NCBI RefSeq assembly: GCF_036588685.1
Contig: NC_086379.1
Span: 77,686,001-77,750,000, forward strand
Reading direction: 5' to 3'
Origin: Mytilus trossulus
Lineage: Eukaryota
DNA length: 64,000 bases
The position numbers were made by a program, and so were the translations under genes. The notes under the pieces were generated by a model that saw only the letters and a program-made list of their open reading frames with translations, was not told the DNA's origin and did no database searches. Positions 31,696 to 45,739 of this stretch are shown here, piece by piece. Position 1 is the first letter of the stretch. Each line of letters opens with the position of its first letter.

Positions 31696-34600
31696 CTATT
31701 TATTTGTAGGTCGACCGTCATCGTCACAAGTAACAGAGTCTGCCCAGTCACAAGTTATTTTCTTTGGATTAAATCTTAATTCACTTGGACATCTATAATG
31801 GAATGTTCGTCCCATATGACATACAAAATATTTATTACAGTTATTTGGGTCTTGAAAATATCCAAATGGTTTTCGTCTACACGAGAATGAGTCTGAAAAA
31901 AACAAAAGTAAATTGAATTGAAATATTTTTTAAATAAAGCAATTGAAAATGGAGCATTAATATTATGTTTTTAAACATATATCCAGAGTTTCCTCATAGT
32001 TTGACAACTGTCGTTCCTGATTTCTCTGGGCCAGCAGTAGAACGGTAGCTTAAATTGGTGTGTTTGATTCTCCGGAATGCCAAATTACGCGGCCATGTCC
32101 TGTCGAAATGGGGGCGTACGTGTAGCGTAAGTGCCAAGCTTTCTGCACATTACATTACCCTTTCAACAACTCTCTAAGGTTCTGAATATACATGAAATAC
32201 ACTCATATACAGTTCATCCGAGTCCATATAGAATCCATAAAAAGAATAATAGTTTAACTATCAAGTGCTCCCTGGTCTAATTCTTCGTTATTTGTCGGGC
32301 TTCCCCTACGTTCCATTTACAGCAAATATTGATTTTAATGGAACTGGAATCATTTTTTAATGATACACTTTGTTCATAAAATGGTATAATTTTATTAAGG
32401 TACTAAAAGTATGGTTGACTCAGGCAAATCATTTAGAATGAAATTCAAAACAGTGTGGCTGTGGCCATTGATTGACACATTAAATTTATCCATTGACTAG
32501 GACAATTTAAGTGAACGTTTGTATGTAACGACCACTGCTCACAATGCACTTTTAAAAGACACTTAAACTATGGGGTCACCAAAGGTTCTCAACACCTAAA
32601 TAAAGTAATTCGAAAAATTAATCAGAAATAACACGATTTTTTGATTTATATCAATTATATAAATCAAAACATAAAGATTATTCCTGATTAATTTTTCGAA
32701 TTATTTTATAATTGAAGGCGTTTAGAAACCTTTGGTGACCACACAGTGTAAATGTCTATAGTAGGTACGTCGTGAACAGTGATCGTTACATACAAACGTT
32801 CACGTAAATTGTCCCAGTCAATAAATGAATTTAATCTGTCAATCAATGGCCACAGCCACACTGTTTTGAATGTCATTCTAATTTAAGTTCAAAATTTAAA
32901 TTGTGAAATACGATGTAGGCAGCAACGTTAGAGAATTGTATAATGAAACTAATAAGTATAACTTAAATATTAGTCAAAGGCGGCATAACTCAATATATTT
33001 ATATTTATAAGGTGACAAACCTGATTTCTTATAGAAATTAATATTGAAATTTAAAAAATACCTAAATACGACCGGGATATATTTATTTCATACATATGCT
33101 TTCTGATATATATACACTTTTGATGTTTTTATGATTGAATTCATTAAATTGCATGGACAATAAATTTAACAATTGTTGATTATACAATGATAGTATTTGT
33201 GTGTGTGTTATGTTACTGAAAGTTAAAAAAAAAATCAATGTAGAAATGCAAAGTGATACCATTGAAACACAAATTACATTTTGACACATTCAACAATTCC
33301 ATCCAATTTTTAAAAGGATTAAAAGACAATTTTACAACAGAAATGATGAACTGTCTTTTTGGATTTTTAGATTCACCTTCACCAGTACTAATAATTAATA
33401 ATTGGAACCCAAGGATGTATAAAAACAAACTTGAACAGTAGAAAAGTAATAAAGAGCATAAAGATAATAGTCAGATAGCTCTAAAGTGACACAAAAGATA
33501 CTTGAATTATTCTTTGATATCATCATAATTACAAAAATACTAGATTTTAAAGATACTACAAAGCGGTGTTTTTTTAATGCGAGTACAACCCCTTTCAATC
33601 ATAATGGATCTGTTGGTCTTCTTTATCAAAAATTTATTACGTGGTTACAATTACACTTTTACTTACATTTTCCGTAAACCATCGCGGTTGGTGCCCAGAT
33701 TGCAGGTGGTGCTATCTTATTGGGTTCGGTTTCGTAGTGTAAATCTGCTGTCCACAACTTTGTAGTAGCTTCCGGTATTGGAGAAAATGTAGTCGGAGTT
33801 TTCATCGTCGTCGTCGTCGTTGCTGTAGTCGTTGTTACTGTTGTTGGGGTTATATGACGAGGTGTTGTTGTCTTCGGATCTATTTTTCTGGTCGTACTTG
33901 ATGTGAGATTTAATACTTTAGTTCTTTCTATATTTTTTAATGTTGATGATAATGCATGTGTCAGAGGAAATGGTACTACTGATGATGAGCATGTTTTACT
34001 GAAGTCATCCAGGGATAGAGACCAGACCATGCTACCACCATATCCTTCTCTAGCTATCCATTCTGCCTACAATTAATACAGTTATACTGTTGAATAGTAA
34101 TTTGGTTGGAGATGATTCACATTTCGTATGAGTCAAACTGGGATTTTATTCATTCAAAGCATTAGAAATTGTGTAAACAGAACAAAATCTATCTTGGTTT
34201 TTGCTAGTATGTATAAGGCTCCGTGTTGAAGGCCGTACTTTAAATTATATTGGTTTACTTTTAAAAAATTATGACTTGGATGGAGAGTTGTTTCATTGGC
34301 ACTCATGACGAGGTAACAGTAGTCAATTGGAAGAAGTTTGCAATAAATATAGTAAAAAAAAACAGAATATATGTCTTCAGTGATCTGGTAACGGTTTCAT
34401 TAGCTGCAAATAGCGAATAAATGTAAAACAAACTATCAAACACTCGATATTTTGGCGTCTGCTCGATGTTACAGCTGGTGATGTCCTAGACCTTGAAAAG
34501 TTTAAAATAACATAGGTTTCTTGTTTAAAAAATGTCTGTTCATTTACTATATTTGGCTTTATAAGAGGGTTGATCTCTGGTACGCCACTTTTAAGCACCT

Positions 34601-37600
34601 GGATATTGAATTTACCTTAGTTCTCACGCTGTCCTCGTCGTCATAGCCGATCCACAGATCTCCTTTCACATAGTAAGGCACCATTTGTTCTTCATCTCTG
34701 TATACCTTACCTTGGCCGTCTTTTTGCAACTGACATATCTAGTTTGATATAAACAATATAAATTAAGGTTGTATAAATTTCTCTTTGTGTATTAGACAAA
34801 AACAATATAGCATAAAAAAATACTTGCATCAACAGTTAACAAAATTGAAACAAGACTATTTGGCCTTGAATGTTTGCCCCTAATATTTTATTAACTGTGC
34901 ATTTGCATTCAGATATCGGAGATAAAATTTATTGGTTCATAGTGTATTAATTTACGTTTTTTGATTGAGTTAAGCCTGCCAATTGATATTTTATCGTGTG
35001 TTGTCTATGTTGTGATGTTATGCTTTGGTTTCCGGAAAAAGGGAGAAGGTTTGGTACCATTAAAACGTTTAATCCCGCTGCAAATGTTTGCACCTGTCCT
35101 AAGTCAGGAATCTGATGCACAGTACATGTTTCGTTAGTCTCTAGAGAAACTTGAGAAGTTGTTTTGAATTTTCATGTTCGAGTGAACCATTAAACAAGTG
35201 GATTCAATGCATTGTCATAAATGAACCTAGAGTTTTTATAATTTTTGTGCGTCTGTAACACTTTTCTGAATATACCTTCAATGTGAACGTTTAAACCCAA
35301 ACATTCTAAAGCAAGGGAGGTAATAATAAATGAATGTGCGAGTTATACGACAGGAAGTGACCACATGGACCAATCAGTTAGTTGTTCACATGTTGTTTAA
35401 ATATGCTTAGCGTTTATACATTACAAAATGTTCATTTGCTTAATCTAAAGACTTTCTCTTAAATCACTTACATATTTATGTTTTTTGTTCTTATTAGAGA
35501 AACATTTATTAAACATTATTTTTTAATAATTTTTCCATTACTAGAGAAACCTTTTTTCATACAGTTGTCACACATAAATTTTTATTCATGAAGATTCAAC
35601 AAAGACGTTATAGTAATATACCTCGTAATATGAATAAAATCCTATTTCCTGAGTAAATGATCCTTTTGGACCAGGTCCGGTGACAGGTGCACCGATACCA
35701 AAATCATTGACTGGATCTGCCAGAACAAATGACCGACCATACGTTGCTATTCCAATGTTGAGTTTATGTTTAGGTGTGCCCTTAGAAACCCAGTACTTTG
35801 CTGCTTTCTCCTGAAAAAATATAGTCTTTACAATAAAAGAAATCTTATGGTTTTTCACAGAAAAATAATTCTTACCGTATTTCAAAGTAAAGTTGTAATT
35901 GCTATAAAAATGTGTATACAAATAACTATTGTTAAAAAAATAAATAAAATGTTTAGTCAAAGCGGACAACATTGAACTTAAATACATTGTACCTTTATTT
36001 TAACTGGAAAATCTTAGACTTCTAGTTTATATAAATGTATATAATTTCTGTGTTCCTATTTTAGTGTCATTTTAGTTTTTTGATTGAACGACGTCCAGTC
36101 CTGCATATTTAGTGTTTGAAAAGACGTATGACATGACACCGGTTGACATGACACTATATAATATTATAGTAATACTATAATATTATATAGTGTCATGTCA
36201 ACCGGTGTCATGTCATACGTTTTTTCAGTTCATACATGTGATTTTTCAAAACTCTTTCAAACTAATCTAACATTTTCTAAATTTAGGTTTATTCAGTACA
36301 CCAATGTTTTAAGTAATTGTCACGATGTTCTTAAAATTGACATTTGTAAATATGTATGGAGCTTGTAAAATATCTCACCCATGTTAATTTATTTTGTTTG
36401 TAAATGTATAAAACTAGAAAAACTATCTAAGACAATTAACCCTCATGTTTTTCTTTAAACTTTAATTCCATTTGACAAATTAAATAAATACCATAGAAAG
36501 TAATCAGTTTCATTTGTACAACGGGGTTTAATCATATGTGTTTGAAGCTATCGTTATAAAACAAAATATTTTACAATAGATATTGCTGCTGCAAAGCTAG
36601 CATTTTTCTATGATTATTCAGTCGTAAAACCATGCCTATATAATGCAGTCACACCACTGACAATTGGGCAATTCTTGTTTGGTTTTGTGTGGAATCAGTG
36701 TAATTATGTTCTTTTACTCTTTCTAAAACGCGTATATGATTCCAAGCCAGTTTTTAATGCCTTGTTTCTGTCTCTTGTCTTAATTTTATAGTGCTTTTAT
36801 TGTATTCTATTTTAAAATTGGTTGCCTCCTTATGAGTTTTTCATCGACATTTTTGGTTTCCGTGTAATATGGTTTATTAACTCCACAATTTCCTCAGTCA
36901 TAATAACTTTCCATCATTACCGAACTGAACAAAGAAATAACACGACGGGTGCCGTATACGGTACAGGAAATGATTATGCTTACCCTTCAGGGGCACCTGA
37001 TTTCACTCCCGTTTTTAGTGGAGTGCGTGTTGTTACTTATTTATTATTTTTAACTGTTGATGTAAATGTCCCTTGATTTTGTGAGTCTTAGTTTACTCCT
37101 TGGTGTTGATTGTTATTGTCTCCTCTGATAACATATCATATCACGATATTCACTTGGCAAGGATTACAATAATAACATATCATATCACGATATTCACTTG
37201 GCAAGGATTACAATAATAACATATCATATCACGATATTCACTTAGCAAGGATAACAATAATAACAATATCATATCACGATATTCACTTGGCAAGGATTAC
37301 AATAATAACAATATCATATCACGATATTCACTTGGCAAGGATTACAATAATAACAATATCATATCACGATATTCACTTGGCAAGGATTACAATAATAACA
37401 ATATCATATCACGATATTCACTTGGCAAGGATTACAATAAAAACATATCATATCACGATATTCACTAGGAAGGATTATATTACGATAATGTTCCCTGTGA
37501 ACATGAGGGGTTGGACCTTATCTTTTGGCTTACGAAGAAGCATAACACGAGTCTGCTGTTTTGATGTTTTACAATATGATTAAGCAAAGACTTACGGTGT

Positions 37601-40600
37601 TCATGTTAGCAGAACCAGTATCCTTGCTGCTACCAAACAATGGACTATTATGACCTGTTTTCCTTTCCCATCCGCCATGAAAATCGTATGACATTAAGTT
37701 TAGAAAGTCCAAATATCTGCAATAATGAACATTTAAAATTAGGCATGTTTTATGATTATGTAAATTCGTGTTTGCATAATTAAACAAATGATATCATTTG
37801 ATAATTTCCCGTTCCTAGAAAACTGATCAAAAGCTAAGTTGGTTTGACAATTTCATTTTAATAAATATTGGTATAATATATGTTTTGTTGACACAGAAAA
37901 AAAGTAAAAAGGTAATGTTGTAAAAGGGTACAATTATCAATTTAAAACTATTGATAAAGCCCAGACTAAACTGGTTTTAACTGATTCTGCTTTTGTCGTA
38001 GACTGGTGTTTGATTATAAACGGGTGCATTTCTATGTCATCGTTTTGTCGGCCATGGTTTTGCTTTGCTTAAGCATTTAGGTTCAACCGTTAACTCACTA
38101 AAATTTTGAATCATCATCTACGTGGATATGTCGGAAATGTTTAGAGAAGAAGTATATACAATTACAAACCTAATAAATCAAGTACAATAAAAAAAAAAGT
38201 CACGGCAGTATGCCAAGGAGGAGTATTTGTAATTTTTAAAATTATCTTTACTATTGTTGTAAAGTCTTTCAACCACTCTTTCGGTTGTGTGTGATTTGTT
38301 TGAAATGTTTACTAATATATTTAACGCTCTGTAAAATGCGCTTTGTGTGCAGTATTTATTTACGATTCAAATATATACCCTTACTTAGATATTTACGATT
38401 CAAATATATACCCTTACTAAGATAATGTTGGTATAACTGAAACCTTTACACCTTTCCACTTCCGCTGAGACTAGTAGTTGTTGAGACTGTACGCGGTGCA
38501 TACAATGTGTTTTTTAATATGATTTTACTCACTTAGATAGTGTTGGTGTATCGTAAACCGAATATTAAACATTTCTACCAATAGGAGCAGCAGCTTATGA
38601 CTATGAGTTGTGTACCGTGTTTTTTTTTTATGATTTAGGTATGTATTATACTTGCTTAGATAGTGTTGGTATATCGTATCCCGAATCTACCACCTTTCTA
38701 CCAGTAGGTACCGCCGCTGAGACTAGTAGTCTACGACGTAAAGATTTCTGTGCCTCCATATCAAAAGCCTCTTTAATTTCCTACATCAAAAATAGAACAA
38801 GCATTGAAAAGCTGTAATTGTTGTAAAATGGATCTTGATGATACTAATATTATTTTCGGGGAATGACCATTTTATTTTTTTTGGAAGAGAGAATGAGTAA
38901 ATAACTTTGCACAAGGGTGAATTAAAATGAATATTCAGCAACACAAAATGAATGAATCAAATATGTGCAAAAGTGAAAAGATGCATAGCAACAGATGACA
39001 ACAATTGATCAATCCAGGGGAAACTATCCTACCTTCACCCCCTCCTTAAACCAAAAGCTTGGTCCCTTATTATAATGAGACGAAAAATAAAAAAAAATAA
39101 TAATAAATATGCATTTTAAAAGTAAAATAACAAAAATACTGAACTTAGAGGAAACTCAATTCGGAAAGTCCATAAGCACATGGCAAAATCAAATAACAAA
39201 ACGCATAAAAAACGAATGGACAAGAACTGTCATATTCCGGACTTGGTACAGGCATTTACAAATGTAGAAAATGGTGGATTAAACCTGGTTCTATAGCGCT
39301 AACCCTCTCACTTTAATGACAGTCTTATCAAATTCCGTTATATTTACATTGATGCGTTAAATAAACAGACACAATAAATAAAATATTCAAAATATGGGTA
39401 CATCAGTCATCATCGTATAACAATTTTAAAAGGAACAATTTAACAGAACAGAAAAGCATCTACTATCTACGAACACATTGATTGATTTGAGTGTCTGACG
39501 TCACAAATTGCTTTATACGTCACATAAATTTGTCGTTCAATGTGCATACAAACAATTTTAAAATTTACATAGGCAATGTTAGCATACAGGTGTAAAAAAA
39601 AAAGTATGTAAGAATAAATTTGAGAAATAGACCGAGATTTAAACTAGTATAGTTAATTCCACTACACGATTGAATGATTATGACGTTTTTGGTTCAACGT
39701 ATATAGTAATTCATAATAGAAATATATCATTATGACATATAATAGAACAATATCATACTGACGGGATCTTTTAAAGTACAGAGTCACGTTATAAGAACAA
39801 AAGAAATACAAAAAGTCGCATATAGAAAACAAACCACCAAAAAATGAAAGCCAATACAAACACATAGACGAGATGTATAAGTACCGAGCCACGTCAAACG
39901 GATATCACATAAAACCATTCAACAGTAAAAGTAATATTAATAATAGAACAAAGACAAATGAAAGAACAATGAAACACGTTGTTAAGATGATAAACAATAT
40001 CAGTACGCAGAATCTATACACCAAGACCATCGTGTTTGATACGGAATAGTTATCAACAAGGTCTTAGTACCTTCCGATGTTAAACGATGTTAAATAAAGG
40101 CAAAAGTAGTATACCGCTGTTCAAAACTCATAAATCCATGGACAAACAAGAATGTGTCCTCAGTACACGAATGCCCCACTCGCACTATCATTTTCCATGT
40201 TCAGTGGACGGTAAAATTGTGGTAAAAACTCTAATTTGGCATTAAAATTAGAAAGATCATATCATAGGGAACATGTGTACTAAGTTTGAAGTCGATTGGA
40301 CTACAACTTCATCAAAAACTACCTTGACCAAAAACTTTAACCTGAAGCGGGACAGACGGACGGACGAACGGACGCACAGACCAGAAAACATAATGCCCCT
40401 CTACTATCGTAGGTGGGGCATAAAAACAAAATTGGGGTAACAAACTACAACCGAGGGAAACGCTAAAACTAAATTCAAAGTTGAAGGTTGTAATGAGAAC
40501 AGCACAAATTTAGTGGAATGAAAATAACTTGAATTACCTTAAGAAGGAGGGCAAAGTTAGGTTTATCCTCCATTTTCCCTTGTCTGAGAGTTGGATATTC

Positions 40601-43600
40601 CCAGTCGATATCTAATCCATCAAAGTTGTGTTTACGTAAAAATTCCATCGTAGACATTATGAACGTCATCCGGTTTTCTGGCGTCGCCACCATATCAGAA
40701 AAAGCTTTACTGCCTGCATTCCATCCACCTATAGCTAACATTGTCTTAACTCCTCGTGTTTTATTCTTTTTACCATTGAATTCTTTATACCTGAAAACTC
40801 AAATAAATAACAGTCAATTAAATTATATAATGTGTATCAATGATTTAAATTATATTTTAATCATATATTTTTGTTTTGATATGTATTAGAACAAACGGTT
40901 TTGGTCACAATTAAATCTTCATAAAATATATATTACGCATAGAAATGAATGGATATGCCATCTTTTAATTGCCATCTTTATTAAAAGATATAATTTTCGC
41001 TGATGACTGCATAAAATAATACATTTTGTTTGGTATTGTATGGTTGGCCATCTTTGTTCGCATAACAATGTGAAACAAAACACAAATTGAATGTTTACAA
41101 TTATTTGGCTTTTTAACTATTTTGATGTGAGCGTCACTGGTGAGTCTTCGGTCTGGCGTATCAAAAATATAAGATAATTATATGTGTTTGTAATGTCAAA
41201 AATAACTTACAACTTTTCATCATTGTACTCTGTAAACACAAGTTTCTTGCCTTCCAATCTAGCAAATGCATAAACAATATGTGTACAGAGATCTGGGTTG
41301 ATATTGTCAGGTGTAAACTTGGCGCCATTGTTACGATACTGGGCCCAGTTAGTGAAGTAGCATATTCGTCGAAAAGTCTTTATTTCTGAAAAAAGAAAAA
41401 CTTACTCAAAGTCTACTTCCAATCAAACATAAACACGAGATATTTTAGTTGTTTTACTGTTAGAAGACATTTCTTCCAGAAAAGCTACTGCTGATCTTAA
41501 CATACAACTTAGATCTTTGGAAACAAAAATAGTTCTCAAAATGCATTTTTTTCTTTTGTCAATTGATGATAAACTCTAAGGGGATGAATTTAAGCTGCTT
41601 TTGAAATATTTACCGAACGTAGAAATAGGAAAATACATGCTGATGGTGTCTATGCATAGATCACAAAAATTGCTTGAATCTTAGATATACTACTAGGTTG
41701 ACTCTTTTTGTAAAAGAAAAGAGGAACGAAAGATACCAAAGGACAGTCAAACTCGTAAATCCAAAACAAACTGACAACGCCATGGCTAAAAATGAAAAAG
41801 ACAAACAGAAAAACAATAGTACACATGACACAACATAGAAAACTAAAGAATAAACAACACGAACCCAACCAATAACTAGGGGTGATCTCAGGTGCTCCGG
41901 AAGGGTAAGCAGATCCTGCTCCACATGCGGCACCCGTCATGTTGCTTATTTGATTACAAATCCGGTAAATAGTATAATTCGGTAGGTCAAATTCATGAAA
42001 GGGAAGGGGATTGTAGTTACGACGTAAGGAAAATATCCGATATCATTTGTGAAAGGGTTATTCCATAACGGTCAACCAACTCGTGATGGCGTTCGTAAAA
42101 TTTACGAAGGGATGATTGTAAATGTTCTTACCCTGTGTTGTCAGCTATGTAATCAGTGTTTCGGTACTGAGATGTTTTATTGAATATTTTTCTTAAATTT
42201 TGGAAAGACAAAATGTATTAAGAAAATAGATTCACGAGTCACTCAGAAAAATTTGTCCTTACTGAAATGTGTTTGGCTATTAGTGTTTTGTCCCTATTGG
42301 TCATCCCGTGTTTCGAAACTTTTACATCTTTGGATTCTATTATTAGGCCGCAGGTGTTTCTGATAAAGTTAATCCAGAAAAGCGCTTCTGAGTTTTCTCG
42401 TTTGAATTGTTTTACATTGTCTTATCGGGGTCTTTTATGGCTGACTATACGGTATGGGCTTTGTTCGTTGTTGAAGGCCGTACGGTGACATATAGTTGTT
42501 AATGTCTGTGTCATTTTGGTCTTTTGTGGATAGTTGTCTCATTGGCAATCATACCACATCTTTTTTTATAAGATTACTAAGGACCAATTTTATATTTTTT
42601 ATTACCACATTGTTCATCTGTCCCATCTAAACAGTCTTGATCACCATCACAGACAAAGGCATTGTTCACACAGACTCCATTACTACACTGAAAATTATCA
42701 TCCGGGCATCTTCTCGTGTTATCGTCTGTTCTTGCTAAAATATATCAAAATTAATCATGCTTTTTGTATATCTTTAACTGATTCACTGTCTTTATCGACC
42801 AAAATTTAGCCTCCAAGTCTTTTCCAAAAATATGTCACGAAACTCGTTAATTTTAGAACCAAACTATGCACTTGGAAAATCCCAATGCAAAGGTATCGCG
42901 CTTCTACTGCTGCCAAATGTCACTATTTGCGGGAGCTTTCACCCATGGAAGCTCCCAAATGGAAACTATGTGAGCGATTTGTGTCCACCATTTTAAACAA
43001 AACAGTTAATTTAACAATGCTATAGGCTTTTAAAAGTATGTAGAAGCAAATAAAAACAACATTAAAATACATTTGTAAGCCCACTTGAAGGTTTTTTAGG
43101 ACTACAAAAGAGTCCTCCTGTACGTATACATGGCGATTTGAAAAGTTTTCATGTAAGCTACTGCTATGCATCTGCCTACGAATAAAAAAATCCCTGCACG
43201 ACCGTCTAAAGCAAAGGCCAACACATCTCACTGTAATTTCACACGAAGCAAAAAACAATGCAAGTTCAAACGGCGTTTAAAATCCATCAAATAGGATGGG
43301 GTATAAGTGAAAACTGGATGGGGTATAAGTGAAAACTCGACAACAGTCAATTCGTCCTAACAAGAATCTAAGTTTAATCTAGAATTTGATATAAAAGTGA
43401 TATATGACTTACGACAGGATTGTTCATCTGAACTATCAGAGCAGTCTGGATCATTGTCACACACCCATTGTTTCGGTATACATGTACCAGTCTTACATCT
43501 GAATTGTGTTTCTAAGCAGTCTTTAAGTTAAGAAAAAACGTTCATTAATATATAATCACTGTCTGTAAATCAAACGATGCTCTCGCCCACTATCAAATCA

Positions 43601-44326
43601 GAATTATGACAGAAGTTTTTCCCGTAAAATAAGAAGTAAAAAAAAAATCAGTGTAATTCCTTTTTGTATGCAGTATCATTATTACGAGTCATCATAATCA
43701 GTCTTATATATGTGTAATTGAATATATGCCTATTAAATGAGTCATCTTAAATTGTTTTTGTTTAAACTGCTTGTTTTAATATTGGCGAATATACTTTTGG
43801 GACCAAAGATTGACGTTTATTTTAAAGCATAAATTTTACATGATTACTTAGTATAAAGGATAAATTAACGCCATTAATATTCATTAGTGAAATATAAAAC
43901 TCTATACATACCTTGTTGTGCATTTAAATATCCTATTTGAATTATAACAATGAATAAAACGTTAAGTCCCAGTTCCTGAAAATGAAATTAAGGCATTGCG
44001 TACATTCATGTTTGTGAGTAGGAAAACTGTTTGATAAGTTAAACTTATAGTACAGCAGAAAGTGACATGCATGAAATTATTATGATTGTTTTTATTATCA
44101 AATACTTATAAAAATCGACTGTTACTTTCCGATATCGTTTTGAAAATAAATACAGCCATCACTATAACGTTATTAGTACACGTGTTATAAATACGAGCTT
44201 GCAAACAAATATTCTCAAACTGATACAAATAATATATTATAACTTGCGTACCAAAAGATTTTGAATAAAAATATCTAATGTTTTATCATAATTTATAATT
44301 AATTAATTAAATTTGGTTCTTACCAT
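31696..44326 (-). CDS. GH18 chitinase: signal peptide, 2x LDL-receptor class A, GH18, Thr-rich linker, CBM14 (about 628 aa, 12 coding exons)
   Basis: Exons 44326-44324 (ATG), 43975-43912, 43520-43413, 42734-42606, 41385-41211, 40790-40538, 38780-38656, 37716-37596, 35810-35622, 34738-34616, 34066-33667, 31892-31696 total 1887 nt in phase. Motifs: [26 protein letters not shown] (catalytic DxDxE intact), [20 protein letters not shown], and a C-terminal six-Cys peritrophin-A domain. Confidence 0.92.
32433..32881. mobile_element. Fold-back MITE with about 200-bp imperfect inverted arms, in the last chitinase intron
   Basis: ttagaatgaaattcaaaacagtgtggctgtggccattgattgaca... pairs with ...tgtcaatcaatggccacagccacactgttttgaatgtcattctaa; the centre is also self-complementary. 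Confidence 0.85.
36124..36220. repeat. Perfect 48-bp inverted repeat with a 1-nt spacer
   Basis: 36124-36171 is the exact reverse complement of 36173-36220. Confidence 0.92.
37128..37478 (+). repeat. 44/45-bp minisatellite, about 8 copies
   Basis: Unit acatatcatatcacgatattcacttggcaaggattacaataata. Confidence 0.92.
39118..40465 (-). mobile_element. Long composite dispersed repeat (family 3) in a chitinase intron
   Basis: 39118-39390 matches 26775-27087 reversed; 40095-40465 matches 45200-45290 and is interrupted by a Helentron-like insert. Confidence 0.6.
40146..40425 (+). mobile_element. Non-autonomous Helentron/pearl-like element
   Basis: Starts aacaagaatgtgtcc, contains a GACG microsatellite (40352-40380) and a 3' hairpin atgcccc...ggggcat, and is inserted in an A-run. 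Confidence 0.75.
41716..42117 (-). mobile_element. 5'-truncated Penelope-like retroelement: RT C-terminus plus 3' tail (family 2)
   Basis: The minus strand encodes [32 protein letters not shown], then the tail ending ggtatctttcgttcctctttt. Clade assignment is from recalled similarity to mollusc PLE-type RT C-termini. Confidence 0.7.
42606..42734 (-). CDS. Chitinase exon encoding LDLa repeat 2
   Basis: 129-nt phase 1-1 exon (TTTTAG...GTAATA): [42 protein letters not shown]. Confidence 0.88.
43413..43520 (-). CDS. Chitinase exon encoding LDLa repeat 1
   Basis: 108-nt phase 1-1 exon (AG...GTAAGT): [36 protein letters not shown]. Confidence 0.88.
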
Positions 44327-45739
44327 GTCATTAAAGTTAACTCAATTTTAAGTAAAATTTCATTCAGTCTGAAATTTGTATTTTTCCAACAATATGGACA
44401 ACAATATATAAAATGTTACCAATTAGTGTTATTTCTTAAGTAGAAAAACATGTCGGTAATTTGGAATCACAAAAAACGATCCCATTTTGTTAAATGGTTT
44501 GTACATATGCCAATTTACAGAAAAACGGTGGCTAGGTATAAATAATACAAATAGACTACACAACGTTACACAGTATACTACATCGTATTTCCTTGTCGCA
44601 CACCATTTCAATTCAATACACTTTGATAAACAACCGCTAATAGGCTATAAAAATGTCAAAAGTACATGTAAAATAGATTTATAATAATTACCTATAATTA
44701 CCAAAAAACATGTGTTTGCATATTTTTGTTCAGAAATTTTACTCAATCATTGTATTACTATGTGTGCCAATTGCATAAATAAGATGTTTATATTAATCCG
44801 TCAACATAAAAAAAACACCATACAGATACAATAAAATGTTTACAAAATAACCATTCACAGGTTAAAATATGTATCAATATTTATTGCAATACCTGCTTTT
44901 AATTCCATTGGAGGACACAAGATTGGAATAATCCGGGGAAAAAAAGAAAATGAAAAGGAATAATTTCCAATAATACATGTATATTAAGGAAGTACTTCAG
45001 AACTAAATACGTCAAATTTGATGAATTGCTAATTGTATATAAAATAACGTTTATAGGATGTTATATCTAATTTTATTTGAAAGTTACGTAAACGGCAAAA
45101 ACAATATATTTGAATTAATAATAAGTACTAGTAATTTTGCTGAGGTGTTAACAATGAAGAAATTTAAGGAAGTGCAAAAAAGTAAATTAATTTATAAGGT
45201 AATGGCAACAGTAGTATACTGCTGTTCATTCATAAATCGATTGAGAAAAAAAACCAAATCCAGGTTACAAACTAAAACTGAGAGAATCACCTCAAATATA
45301 AGAGGAGAACAACGACACAACAGAAACGCAACACTAAATGGCAACGCACACAGAAAAGAACTATTATATTACAATGACCATTTTGCTAAACCATGATTTG
45401 AATACAGACTAAAAAAATGACCCGGTACGAACTGGCAACTTTACTAAATGTCTCCAACTTCATAACCAACATTCAAGATGCTTTTTTAACCTTAGACACG
45501 CCGTGAAAAATATGATGATAACATATTTTGAAATGTAATTAGAAGTATGAACATCAAGAAGGAAATATCTTGACATTACAATTTACTTGTATAGATAAAT
45601 CTATACCAATTAAGAACGCAAACTCCAGTACATTTGTATAACTATGTGTTTCCATTCAAAACACTTTATCTAACTTTTTCAAGAATAGTGAGATATTCTT
45701 TTTCTTGTTAAATTATACGGAGAAGCAGTAGATAACAAA

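What the first reader, a model, noticed from the sequence alone, without database searches (positions are those of the whole stretch)
42606..43520. Chitinase with two N-terminal LDL-receptor class A modules on hidden symmetric exons
Seen: between the signal-peptide exon (ends phase 1) and the first GH18 exon (starts phase 1) lie two phase 1-1 exons too short for the ORF track. Each encodes a six-Cys LDLa repeat with the acidic CD...DC.D..DE motif. The product is SP-LDLa-LDLa-GH18(active DxDxE)-Thr linker-CBM14. Known: LDLa repeats bind Ca2+ and protein ligands and occur with CBM14 in arthropod chitin deacetylases; standard animal GH18 chitinases lack them as far as I know. Inference: exon shuffling produced a chitinase that may be tethered in a Ca2+-dependent way to matrix proteins (shell matrix or gut matrix). 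Either exon could be skipped in frame, allowing 0, 1 or 2 LDLa isoforms.
Basis: partly seen in the sequence, partly recalled or inferred. Interest (0 to 1): 0.82.

Follow-up and report, generated by a model that had tools for sequence, protein, structure and literature searches.

The report
Mussel chitinase with two LDLa modules
The two short hidden exons are real and are spliced into an expressed mussel chitinase gene, but this LDLa-chitinase design already sits, so far unremarked, in the gene predictions of oysters, scallops and an ark clam, so it is an old bivalve gene family rather than a one-off invention.

Summary
The exons at 43520-43413 and 42734-42606 (minus strand) each pass Pfam Ldl_recept_a (E 1.8e-14 and 4.9e-11). 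One spliced 1,199-nt transcript contig from public run X1 joins them exactly as predicted: 43912>43520, 43413>42734 and 42606>41385.

Its last three bases are the ATG. The full model has 12 exons and 628 aa: signal peptide, LDLa, LDLa, GH18 with an intact FDGLDIDWE motif, a Thr-rich linker, and CBM14.

- The design is not unique. Pfam finds LDLa+GH18+CBM14 in predicted proteins of Ostrea, Saccostrea, Crassostrea virginica, Ylistrum and Tegillarca, and LDLa+GH18 in Mizuhopecten.
- The oyster and scallop catalytic domains form one clade (support 99/99).
- These proteins are the best matches to the window's GH18 exons.
- The probable Crassostrea gigas orthologue, Cgchit4, has been published as a larval shell-field chitinase. 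Its text never mentions LDLa.
- Among about 21 GH18 genes in this mytilid genome, none of the 20 other GH18 loci checked has an LDLa exon within 10 kb upstream.
- No exon-skipping isoform was seen.
- Ca2+-dependent tethering remains an inference.

Verdict: a new member of an existing but undescribed bivalve chitinase group, of moderate interest.

The parts
44324..44536 (-). Exon 1: 5' UTR ending in the start codon ATG (44326-44324). The 5' limit is only the end of the contig.
   Evidence: The X1 contig piece at 44323-44536 is joined to exon 2. The sequence reads ...tgacATG|gtaaga. The one-base ambiguity (G at 44323 versus G at 43975) explains the tool's coordinates.
43912..43975 (-). Exon 2: signal-peptide exon ([21 protein letters not shown]). 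It starts in phase 0 and ends in phase 1.
   Evidence: joint 43520/43912. The hydrophobic core is read directly from the sequence. No signal-peptide predictor was available.
43413..43520 (-). Exon 3: LDLa module 1, 108 nt, phase 1-1.
   Evidence: Pfam PF00057 E 1.8e-14. Matches PDB LDLa modules. Joints 43520/43912 and 42734/43413.
42606..42734 (-). Exon 4: an 8-residue spacer plus LDLa module 2, 129 nt, phase 1-1.
   Evidence: Pfam PF00057 E 4.9e-11. Joints 42734/43413 and 41385/42606.
41211..41385 (-). Exon 5: GH18 profile positions 1-47.
   Evidence: Pfam PF00704 E 5.9e-9. Joints on both sides.
40538..40790 (-). Exon 6: GH18 profile positions 51-131, with the catalytic motif FDGLDIDWE.
   Evidence: Pfam E 8.5e-25. 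Sequence. Joint 40790/41211.
38656..38780 (-). Exon 7: GH18 positions 132-169. It is followed by a GC-AG intron (AA|GCAAGT).
   Evidence: Only the GC donor keeps the frame and gives the conserved ...LSK|YLDF... junction.
37596..37716 (-). Exon 8: GH18 positions 172-204 ([17 protein letters not shown]).
   Evidence: Pfam E 3.4e-10. Splice sites.
35622..35810 (-). Exon 9: GH18 positions 207-256.
   Evidence: Pfam E 5.9e-8..
34616..34738 (-). Exon 10: GH18 positions 258-297.
   Evidence: Pfam E 3.3e-5..
33667..34066 (-). Exon 11: the end of GH18 and the Thr-rich linker.
   Evidence: tblastn matches to the bivalve orthologues. Translation. No Pfam hit on its own.
31696..31892 (-). Exon 12: CBM14 (peritrophin-A) module and the stop codon (31698-31696).
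   Evidence: Pfam PF01607 E 5.3e-14..

Best explanation
Shown: this is an expressed 12-exon gene on the minus strand (about 44536 to 31696) of a mytilid mussel genome. It encodes a 628-aa secreted GH18 chitinase with two N-terminal LDL-receptor class A modules, a mucin-like Thr-rich linker and a C-terminal CBM14 chitin-binding module. Each LDLa module lies on its own phase 1-1 exon, and both are included in the one transcript contig seen. It is the mussel member of a conserved pteriomorph-bivalve LDLa-GH18-CBM14 chitinase group. Oysters have one LDLa; scallops and the ark clam have two. Inferred: GH18 cuts chitin and CBM14 holds the enzyme on chitin. The LDLa modules have complete Ca2+-cage residues and are conserved as well as the catalytic domain. 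They most likely act as Ca2+-dependent protein-binding handles that place or retain the enzyme at a chitin-protein matrix. The shell-forming margin is the most probable site, because the probable oyster orthologue Cgchit4 is transcribed at the larval shell-field margin and periostracum edge. The binding partner and the Ca2+ dependence have not been tested.
For: LDLa identity. Splicing of both exons into the chitinase mRNA. No second copy of either exon in the assembly, so the contig is not a retrocopy. All nine listed differences between the transcript contig and the window in exons 3-6 are synonymous third-position changes, one in each LDLa exon. GH18 profile covered collinearly over seven exons with an intact FDGLDIDWE, and CBM14 present. 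Same architecture by Pfam in Ylistrum, Ostrea and Tegillarca. Same families in the precomputed Pfam lists for Saccostrea and C. virginica, and PF00057+PF00704 for Mizuhopecten. LDLa motif found in all of them. These proteins are the top scorers against the window's GH18 exons even with LDLa left out. Their catalytic domains form one clade with 99/99 support and a single change of the LDLa label. LDLa conservation roughly equals that of the whole protein: 86-97% between the two scallops, and 32 of 37 residues identical (about 86%, my count) between the Ostrea and C. virginica modules, against 85-89% overall. Shell-field expression of Cgchit4, whose nearest relatives in its own tree are exactly P0320 and P0151: PMC6705186.
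Against: Transcript support is a single assembled contig from one run whose RNA label is a guess. Three other runs laid showed only repeats. The tissue of expression in the mussel is unknown. That Cgchit4 carries an LDLa is inferred from its length (706 aa), its Glyco_18 span (81-426) and its listed relatives. I could not fetch its sequence. No partner, Ca2+ dependence or enzyme activity was tested. The window protein itself was not placed in the tree, because the joined model was deliberately not built. The breadth of the architecture outside Pteriomorphia is unknown.
Confidence: 0.8

Rival explanations
1. The LDLa modules are a trafficking handle. They would bind a receptor or chaperone of the secretory or endocytic route to direct apical secretion, uptake or transcytosis of the enzyme, rather than tethering it in the matrix.
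For: LDLa modules are classic ligand and receptor-interaction units, and the nearest solved structures are LDLR, LRP2 and VLDLR. Arthropod chitin deacetylases also combine CBM14 and LDLa on a secreted chitin-modifying enzyme (for the literature; the details are my own background knowledge). The N-terminal position next to the signal peptide is compatible with this.
Against: Nothing here points to trafficking specifically. The module number varies between lineages, one in oysters and two elsewhere, which fits an avidity or tether role at least as well.
Confidence: 0.2
2. The LDLa modules bind a soluble ligand such as a lipoprotein or a microbial surface. The enzyme would then serve digestion or immunity rather than shell formation.
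For: Remipede venom has LDLa modules fused to peptidase S1, and the authors propose lipoprotein targeting (PMC5577568). A survey reports that molluscan GH18 genes are mostly expressed in the hepatopancreas (PMC7560691). One listed run is an invertebrate gut metatranscriptome.
Against: That gut run (X21) showed no transcript contig for this gene. The probable oyster orthologue is transcribed at the shell-field margin.
Confidence: 0.1
3. One reading: exons 3 and 4 are cassette exons, and regulated skipping gives isoforms with 0, 1 or 2 LDLa modules.
For: Both exons are phase 1-1 with lengths of 108 and 129 nt, so any skip stays in frame and creates no stop at the new junction codon.
Against: The only transcript contig contains both exons, and no skip joint was listed. 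All 13 oyster isoform or allele models keep the module, and their differences lie elsewhere. Contigs can hide rare variants, so this is not excluded.
Confidence: 0.1
4. The LDLa exons belong to a different, overlapping or neighbouring transcript, or are chance open frames in an intron.
For: None beyond their shortness.
Against: The exons are spliced on both sides to chitinase exons in one contig. Pfam scores are far above the cut-off. The same modules stand at the same place in orthologues.
Confidence: 0.01

Closest known systems
Predicted bivalve LDLa-GH18-CBM14 chitinases: Ostrea edulis XP_048764579.2, Saccostrea echinata XP_061191469.1, Crassostrea virginica XP_022315646.1, Ylistrum balloti (P0037), Mizuhopecten yessoensis OWF49953.1, Tegillarca granosa KAJ8318008.1
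   Same: The domain order is the same. They are the best matches to the window's GH18 exons, at 51-57% identity, and are collinear exon by exon. The junction from LDLa straight into the ...RRICY(F/Y)TNW start of GH18 is the same.
   Different: They carry only automatic names such as chitotriosidase-1-like or acidic mammalian chitinase-like. Oysters have one LDLa. In scallops and the ark clam, the module most like the window's distal LDLa-1 is the one next to GH18. The window's proximal LDLa-2 has no clear counterpart.
Cgchit4 of Crassostrea gigas (XP_011432127.1; Zhang et al. 2019, PMC6705186)
   Same: It is 706 aa with Glyco_18 at residues 81-426, the same layout as the oyster LDLa-chitinases (GH18 at 80-424 in P0038). 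Its listed nearest relatives are P0320 and P0151. It has the FDGLDxDW active site.
   Different: The paper reports only the Glyco_18 domain and never mentions LDLa. Orthology and the presence of LDLa are inferred here, not checked on its sequence. It gives functional context that the mussel gene lacks: whole-mount in situ signal at the shell-field margin and periostracum edge, and induction at pH 7.4.
Arthropod group I chitin deacetylases (CDA1/serpentine, CDA2/vermiform): CBM14-LDLa-CE4
   Same: They are secreted enzymes that modify extracellular chitin and combine a CBM14 chitin-binding module with an LDLa module (papers listed).
   Different: The catalytic domain is a CE4 deacetylase, not GH18. 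The module order differs (CBM14 N-terminal, then LDLa), and there is one LDLa. This is a different phylum and an independent domain combination, so it is an analogue and not a relative.
Vertebrate and insect GH18-CBM14 chitinases (acidic mammalian chitinase, chitotriosidase, insect Cht groups)
   Same: They share the GH18 catalytic domain with the DxxDxDxE motif, a Ser/Thr-rich linker and a C-terminal CBM14. They are about 45-50% identical to the window's exons.
   Different: They have no LDLa modules.
Remipede venom LDLa-peptidase S1 proteins (PMC5577568)
   Same: One or more N-terminal LDLa modules are fused to a secreted hydrolase.
   Different: The catalytic domain is a protease. The proposed target is lipoprotein. 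They are unrelated in sequence outside the LDLa modules.

Membership tests
LDL-receptor class A module (Pfam PF00057) | Profile match above the curated cut-off over the whole ~37-residue module | tested here: met
   Scores are 54.1 and 43.1 bits against a cut-off of 24.1. Profile positions 3-37 and 2-35 of 37 are matched. In-genome search gives 52.6 and 42.2 bits.
LDL-receptor class A module (Pfam PF00057) | Six cysteines in the canonical spacing | tested here: met
   Module 1 is [35 protein letters not shown] and module 2 is [34 protein letters not shown].
LDL-receptor class A module (Pfam PF00057) | Acidic Ca2+-cage residues: aromatic-x-C-D-x-D/G-x-D-C-x-D-x-S/T-D-E | tested here: met
   Module 1 reads [15 protein letters not shown] and module 2 reads [15 protein letters not shown]. 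Module 1 aligns residue by residue to LRP2 and LDLR modules. Which residues ligate Ca2+ is taken from established LDLR structures. Ca2+ binding itself was not tested.
Glycoside hydrolase family 18 chitinase (Pfam PF00704) | Collinear coverage of the TIM-barrel profile | tested here: met
   The exons match profile positions 1-47, 51-131, 132-169, 172-204, 207-256 and 258-297 in order.
Glycoside hydrolase family 18 chitinase (Pfam PF00704) | Catalytic DxxDxDxE motif with the proton-donor Glu, which separates enzymes from chitinase-like lectins | tested here: met
   [11 protein letters not shown] lies in exon 6. The downstream MSYDFHG motif lies in exon 8.
Glycoside hydrolase family 18 chitinase (Pfam PF00704) | Chitin hydrolysis | not testable with these tools
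   This needs a recombinant enzyme assay.
CBM14 / peritrophin-A chitin-binding module (Pfam PF01607) | Profile match above the cut-off, with six cysteines | tested here: met
   Score is 52.5 bits against a cut-off of 22.1, over profile positions 1-53 of 53. Six Cys are present in [52 protein letters not shown].
Pteriomorph bivalve LDLa-GH18-CBM14 chitinase group (Cgchit4-like) | Same domain order, with LDLa directly upstream of GH18 | tested here: met
   Window. Relatives.
Pteriomorph bivalve LDLa-GH18-CBM14 chitinase group (Cgchit4-like) | The catalytic domain falls inside the group's clade | tested here: inconclusive
   Oyster and scallop members form a 99/99 clade. With the LDLa exons left out, the window's seven GH18 exons score highest against group members (486-515 bits; the next non-member scores 462). 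The window was not placed in the tree because the joined protein was not built. Tegillarca P0047 was left out because its model lacks the motif.
Arthropod group I chitin deacetylase (CBM14-LDLa-CE4) | CE4 polysaccharide deacetylase catalytic domain | tested here: not met
   The only catalytic domain found is GH18. This family is an analogue only.

The most novel reading that the evidence does not exclude
The LDLa modules make chitin remodelling at the shell-forming front sensitive to Ca2+ and pH. With Ca2+ bound, they would clamp the chitinase onto Lys-rich matrix or periostracal proteins. At low Ca2+ or low pH they would let go, as LDL-receptor modules release ligand in acidic endosomes. Enzyme placement would then respond directly to the chemistry of the calcifying fluid. 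That would give a mechanistic link between ocean acidification, chitin scaffold turnover and larval shell failure. It would also be a case of convergence with arthropod CBM14-LDLa chitin deacetylases.
Probability: 0.15. Interest if true: 0.65.

Novelty: new member of a known kind. Interest (0 to 1): 0.36.

Why it matters
The work gives a transcript-verified gene model for a mussel chitinase whose two short LDLa exons are easy to miss. It shows that the LDLa-GH18-CBM14 design is an old, conserved feature of mussels, oysters, scallops and ark clams, not an annotation accident. It also points out that a published shell-formation chitinase, Cgchit4, very probably carries an LDLa module that the paper never mentions.

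Bivalves and arthropods have each put LDLa and CBM14 on a secreted chitin-modifying enzyme. This suggests a general but unexplained role for LDLa in handling chitin matrices. That role can be tested with simple deletion and Ca2+/EDTA binding experiments.

Tried and rejected
**Searches that found nothing or too little**
1. Literature search for the LDLa+GH18 combination. No paper in the held library describes it. Every co-occurrence of the two terms concerned separate proteins: the Perna and Cepaea shell proteomes, the Nematostella table, and remipede venom. One search failed on a term-length error and was re-sent.
2. Word-index search with the N-terminal part of the scallop protein. It gave only 55 candidates and found only the two scallop proteins, so it could not measure breadth.
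3. ESM Atlas. All hits scored below 0.8 and nothing could be used.
4. Earlier notes of this scan. Nothing bore on this gene.

5. The look-up of encoding contigs, to compare exon structure in the oyster, scallop and ark-clam genes.
6. Expression evidence from runs X5, X7 and X21. They showed only high-copy repeats in the introns and upstream region, with no transcript of this gene.

**Ideas tested and rejected**
7. A recent donor for the LDLa exons. The nearest other LDLa exons in the genome are only 57-58% and 49-53% identical, which is generic family similarity. Rejected.
8. LDLa exons upstream of other GH18 genes in this genome. None lies within 10 kb of 20 other loci (best E 1.2), while the same scan recovers both window exons at E 2e-15 and 9e-13.
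9. A canonical GT donor for the intron after exon 7. It breaks the frame; the GC donor AA|GCAAGT restores it.

10. The joined 628-aa protein was never assembled, searched or folded. The length comes from adding up exon coordinates.
11. No structure or complex prediction was run, because no specific binding claim could be tested that way.
Full report
**1. The observation**

On the minus strand, the stretch 43520-43413 is bounded by ...ttaaag| and |gtaagt. The stretch 42734-42606 is bounded by ...ttttag| and |gtaat. Read in phase 1, they translate to [35 protein letters not shown] and to RTDDNTRR followed by [34 protein letters not shown].

Both pass Pfam Ldl_recept_a well above the curated cut-off: 54.1 and 43.1 bits against 24.1, with E 1.8e-14 and 4.9e-11. 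The first also aligns module for module with solved LRP2, LDLR and VLDLR repeats. Each module has six cysteines, the aromatic residue before the fourth Cys (W in one, F in the other), and the full acidic block D-x-D-x-D-C-x-D-x-(S/T)-D-E. That block forms the Ca2+ cage in LDLR modules. The assignment of ligand residues is established structural knowledge, not something tested here.

**2. Are they exons of the chitinase?**

Yes. Run X1 holds one 1,199-nt contig at depth 34.9. Its pieces lie on these intervals:
- 40528-40787
- 41208-41385
- 42606-42734
- 43413-43520
- 43912 to about 43974
- 44323-44536

Every skipped interval reads CT..AC on the + strand, which is GT..AG on the gene strand. No 43912>41385 skip was listed.

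X1 is labelled RNA only by guess. However, a contig that lacks five introns at exact splice sites must come from processed RNA or from a retrocopy. The assembly holds no second copy of either LDLa exon: the next best matches are 58% and 53% identical. So the contig is mRNA.

The three other runs (X5, X7, X21) showed only high-copy repeats at 41644-42638 and 45027-45424. They say nothing about this gene.

All nine differences listed between the contig and the window in exons 3-6 are synonymous third-position changes, one in each LDLa exon. By chance, nine of nine at third positions has probability about 5e-5. Five further differences were not displayed by the tool.

**3. The gene model**

Its last three bases are the ATG (…tgacATG|gtaaga). 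The signal-peptide exon 43975-43912 has no in-frame ATG of its own.

I fixed the downstream exon boundaries from stop-free frames, splice dinucleotides and collinear tblastn matches to relatives. The exons are:
- 41385-41211
- 40790-40538, carrying [11 protein letters not shown]
- 38780-38656
- 37716-37596
- 35810-35622
- 34738-34616
- 34066-33667, the end of GH18 plus the Thr-rich linker
- 31892-31699, followed by the stop codon

The intron after 38656 needs a GC donor (AA|GCAAGT). The nearby GT would shift the frame.

Pfam places the exons at GH18 profile positions 1-47, 51-131, 132-169, 172-204, 207-256 and 258-297, in that order. It places the last exon on CBM14 at E 5.3e-14.

Every search was done exon by exon, by reference.

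**4. Relatives**

I searched the 84-aa catalytic exon against 1.84 billion cluster representatives. Among the single-domain hits with the highest identity were P0037 (64%), P0047 (64%) and P0038 (61%). In each of these the match lies 50-190 residues further from the N-terminus than in ordinary chitinases.

Pfam shows LDLa x2 + GH18 + CBM14 in P0037 and P0047, and LDLa x1 + GH18 + CBM14 in P0038. Source names identify them as follows:
- P0037: Ylistrum balloti
- P0047: Tegillarca granosa
- P0038: Ostrea edulis, with three further isoforms
- P0151: Mizuhopecten yessoensis OWF49953.1, added

A third search added Saccostrea echinata, Crassostrea virginica XP_022315646.1 and an unnamed Logan protein.

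Of the 357 proteins fetched in all searches, about 330 carry GH18. Only this bivalve group has an LDLa motif next to GH18.

With the LDLa exons left out, the window's seven GH18 exons score highest against exactly these proteins: 486-515 bits at 51-56% identity, against 462 bits for the next non-member. A maximum-likelihood tree of the catalytic region has 39 single-domain proteins, with the LDLa columns dropped. It puts the oyster and scallop LDLa-chitinases in one clade with support 99/99, and the LDLa label changes only once. P0047 was left out of the tree because its gene model lacks the catalytic motif. The window was left out because the joined sequence was not built.

**5. The genome**

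The assembly is 1.30 Gb, and the window is C7:77,686,001-77,750,000. Its two-domain chitinase at C7:68.30-68.33 Mb is about 90% identical to a Mytilus galloprovincialis protein and about 83% identical to a M. coruscus protein. I therefore infer that the genome belongs to a mytilid mussel.

With this, the architecture is seen in four pteriomorph orders: Mytilida, Ostreida, Pectinida and Arcida. These lineages are very old, which is background knowledge. So the fusion is ancient, not a recent shuffling event.

The genome has about 21 GH18 genes, most of them on C7. A scan of the 10 kb upstream of 20 others found no LDLa exon (best E 1.2). The same scan recovers both window exons at E 2e-15 and 9e-13.

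**6. The literature**

No paper in the held library describes an LDLa-GH18 protein. The molluscan GH survey PMC7560691 lists CBMs on GH18 genes but not LDLa.

An accession search led to PMC6705186 (Zhang et al. 2019). That paper cloned Cgchit4 from Crassostrea gigas:
- It is 706 aa, with Glyco_18 at residues 81-426.
- Its chitinase tree uses XP_022315646.1 and OWF49953.1, which are precisely P0320 and P0151.
- Its layout equals that of the oyster LDLa-chitinases, where GH18 spans 80-424 and LDLa spans 38-74.

Cgchit4 is therefore very probably an orthologue with one LDLa module. The paper's text never mentions LDLa. It reports whole-mount in situ signal at the margin of the shell field and at the periostracum edge of larvae. 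It also reports higher mRNA at pH 7.4. I could not fetch the Cgchit4 sequence, so this link is an inference.

**7. How it most likely works**

Shown: the gene encodes a secreted, catalytically intact GH18 with a CBM14, and both LDLa modules are in the transcript.

Inferred: the LDLa modules are functional Ca2+-binding, protein-binding units. Four observations support this:
- All cage residues are present.
- The modules are about as conserved as the enzyme. The scallop modules are 86% and 97% identical, and the Ostrea and C. virginica modules share 32 of 37 residues (about 86%, my count), against 85-89% for the whole proteins.
- They have been kept in four orders.
- Every one of the 13 oyster isoform or allele models retains the module.

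The best-supported role is to place or hold the chitinase on a protein partner in a chitin-protein matrix, probably at the shell-forming margin. My confidence in that specific mechanism is about 0.35. My confidence in the identity of the gene and its family is about 0.95.

The rival explanations are a trafficking handle, binding of lipoprotein or microbes in digestion or immunity, and regulated exon skipping. Skipping would stay in frame, but nothing observed supports it.

**8. An unexplained detail**

The window's distal module LDLa-1 (…[13 protein letters not shown]…) is 56-62% identical to the GH18-proximal module of scallops and the ark clam. It is only 43-51% identical to their distal module. 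The window's proximal LDLa-2 has no clear counterpart, at 41-52% identity to all of them.

This could mean that second modules were gained independently in different lineages, which would be easy with phase 1-1 exons. It could also be noise in 35-residue comparisons.

**9. Verdict**

The gene is a new member, here verified by a transcript, of a conserved bivalve chitinase group. That group exists in public predictions and has probably been studied once, but its LDLa modules have gone unremarked. It is of moderate interest. The main value lies in the convergence with arthropod CBM14-LDLa chitin deacetylases and in a cheap, clear experimental test of what LDLa does on chitin-modifying enzymes.

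Noticed in passing
window 38655-38654 (minus strand), the intron after exon 7: This is a GC-AG intron. The donor reads AA|GCAAGT. The nearby GT (after 38652) would shift the frame and run into a stop, whereas the GC donor gives the conserved ...LSK|YLDF... junction.
   Followed up: partly
window 44326-44324 and 44330-44363: The start codon is the last three bases of exon 1, so the coding part of exon 1 is the ATG alone. The 5' exon also holds a short upstream ORF (atgaaattttacttaaaattgagttaa) and an out-of-frame ATG five bases before the real one.
   Followed up: no
window 41644-42638 (intron between LDLa-2 and GH18 exon 1) and 45027-45424: These are very high-copy repeats. Thousands of short contigs from all four runs, drawn from three coded organisms, pile up here at 90-99% identity with many internal joints. 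They look like abundant transposable elements and are not part of the gene.
   Followed up: no
window 43414-43518 and 42607-42708 versus P0037, P0151, P0047, P0038: The module order looks swapped. The window's distal LDLa-1 is most like the GH18-proximal LDLa of scallops and the ark clam (56-62%), while the window's proximal LDLa-2 has no clear orthologue. This may reflect independent gain of a second module, or noise.
   Followed up: partly
G000 contig C7: 27.80-27.86, 60.30-60.35, 61.04, 68.30-68.33, 77.72, 79.61 and 83.01-83.21 Mb: Most of the roughly 21 GH18 genes of this genome lie on one chromosome-scale contig, in several tandem clusters. At least six copies lie at 83.0-83.2 Mb.
   Followed up: partly
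P0047 (Tegillarca granosa KAJ8318008.1): This predicted protein has two LDLa modules 80 residues apart. Its GH18 match starts only at profile position 62, and the DxxDxDWE motif is absent. It is probably a faulty gene model rather than a real loss.
   Followed up: no
P0001: A 5,937-aa predicted protein with six stretches matching the GH18 exon was the top hit by summed score. Its source is unknown.
   Followed up: no
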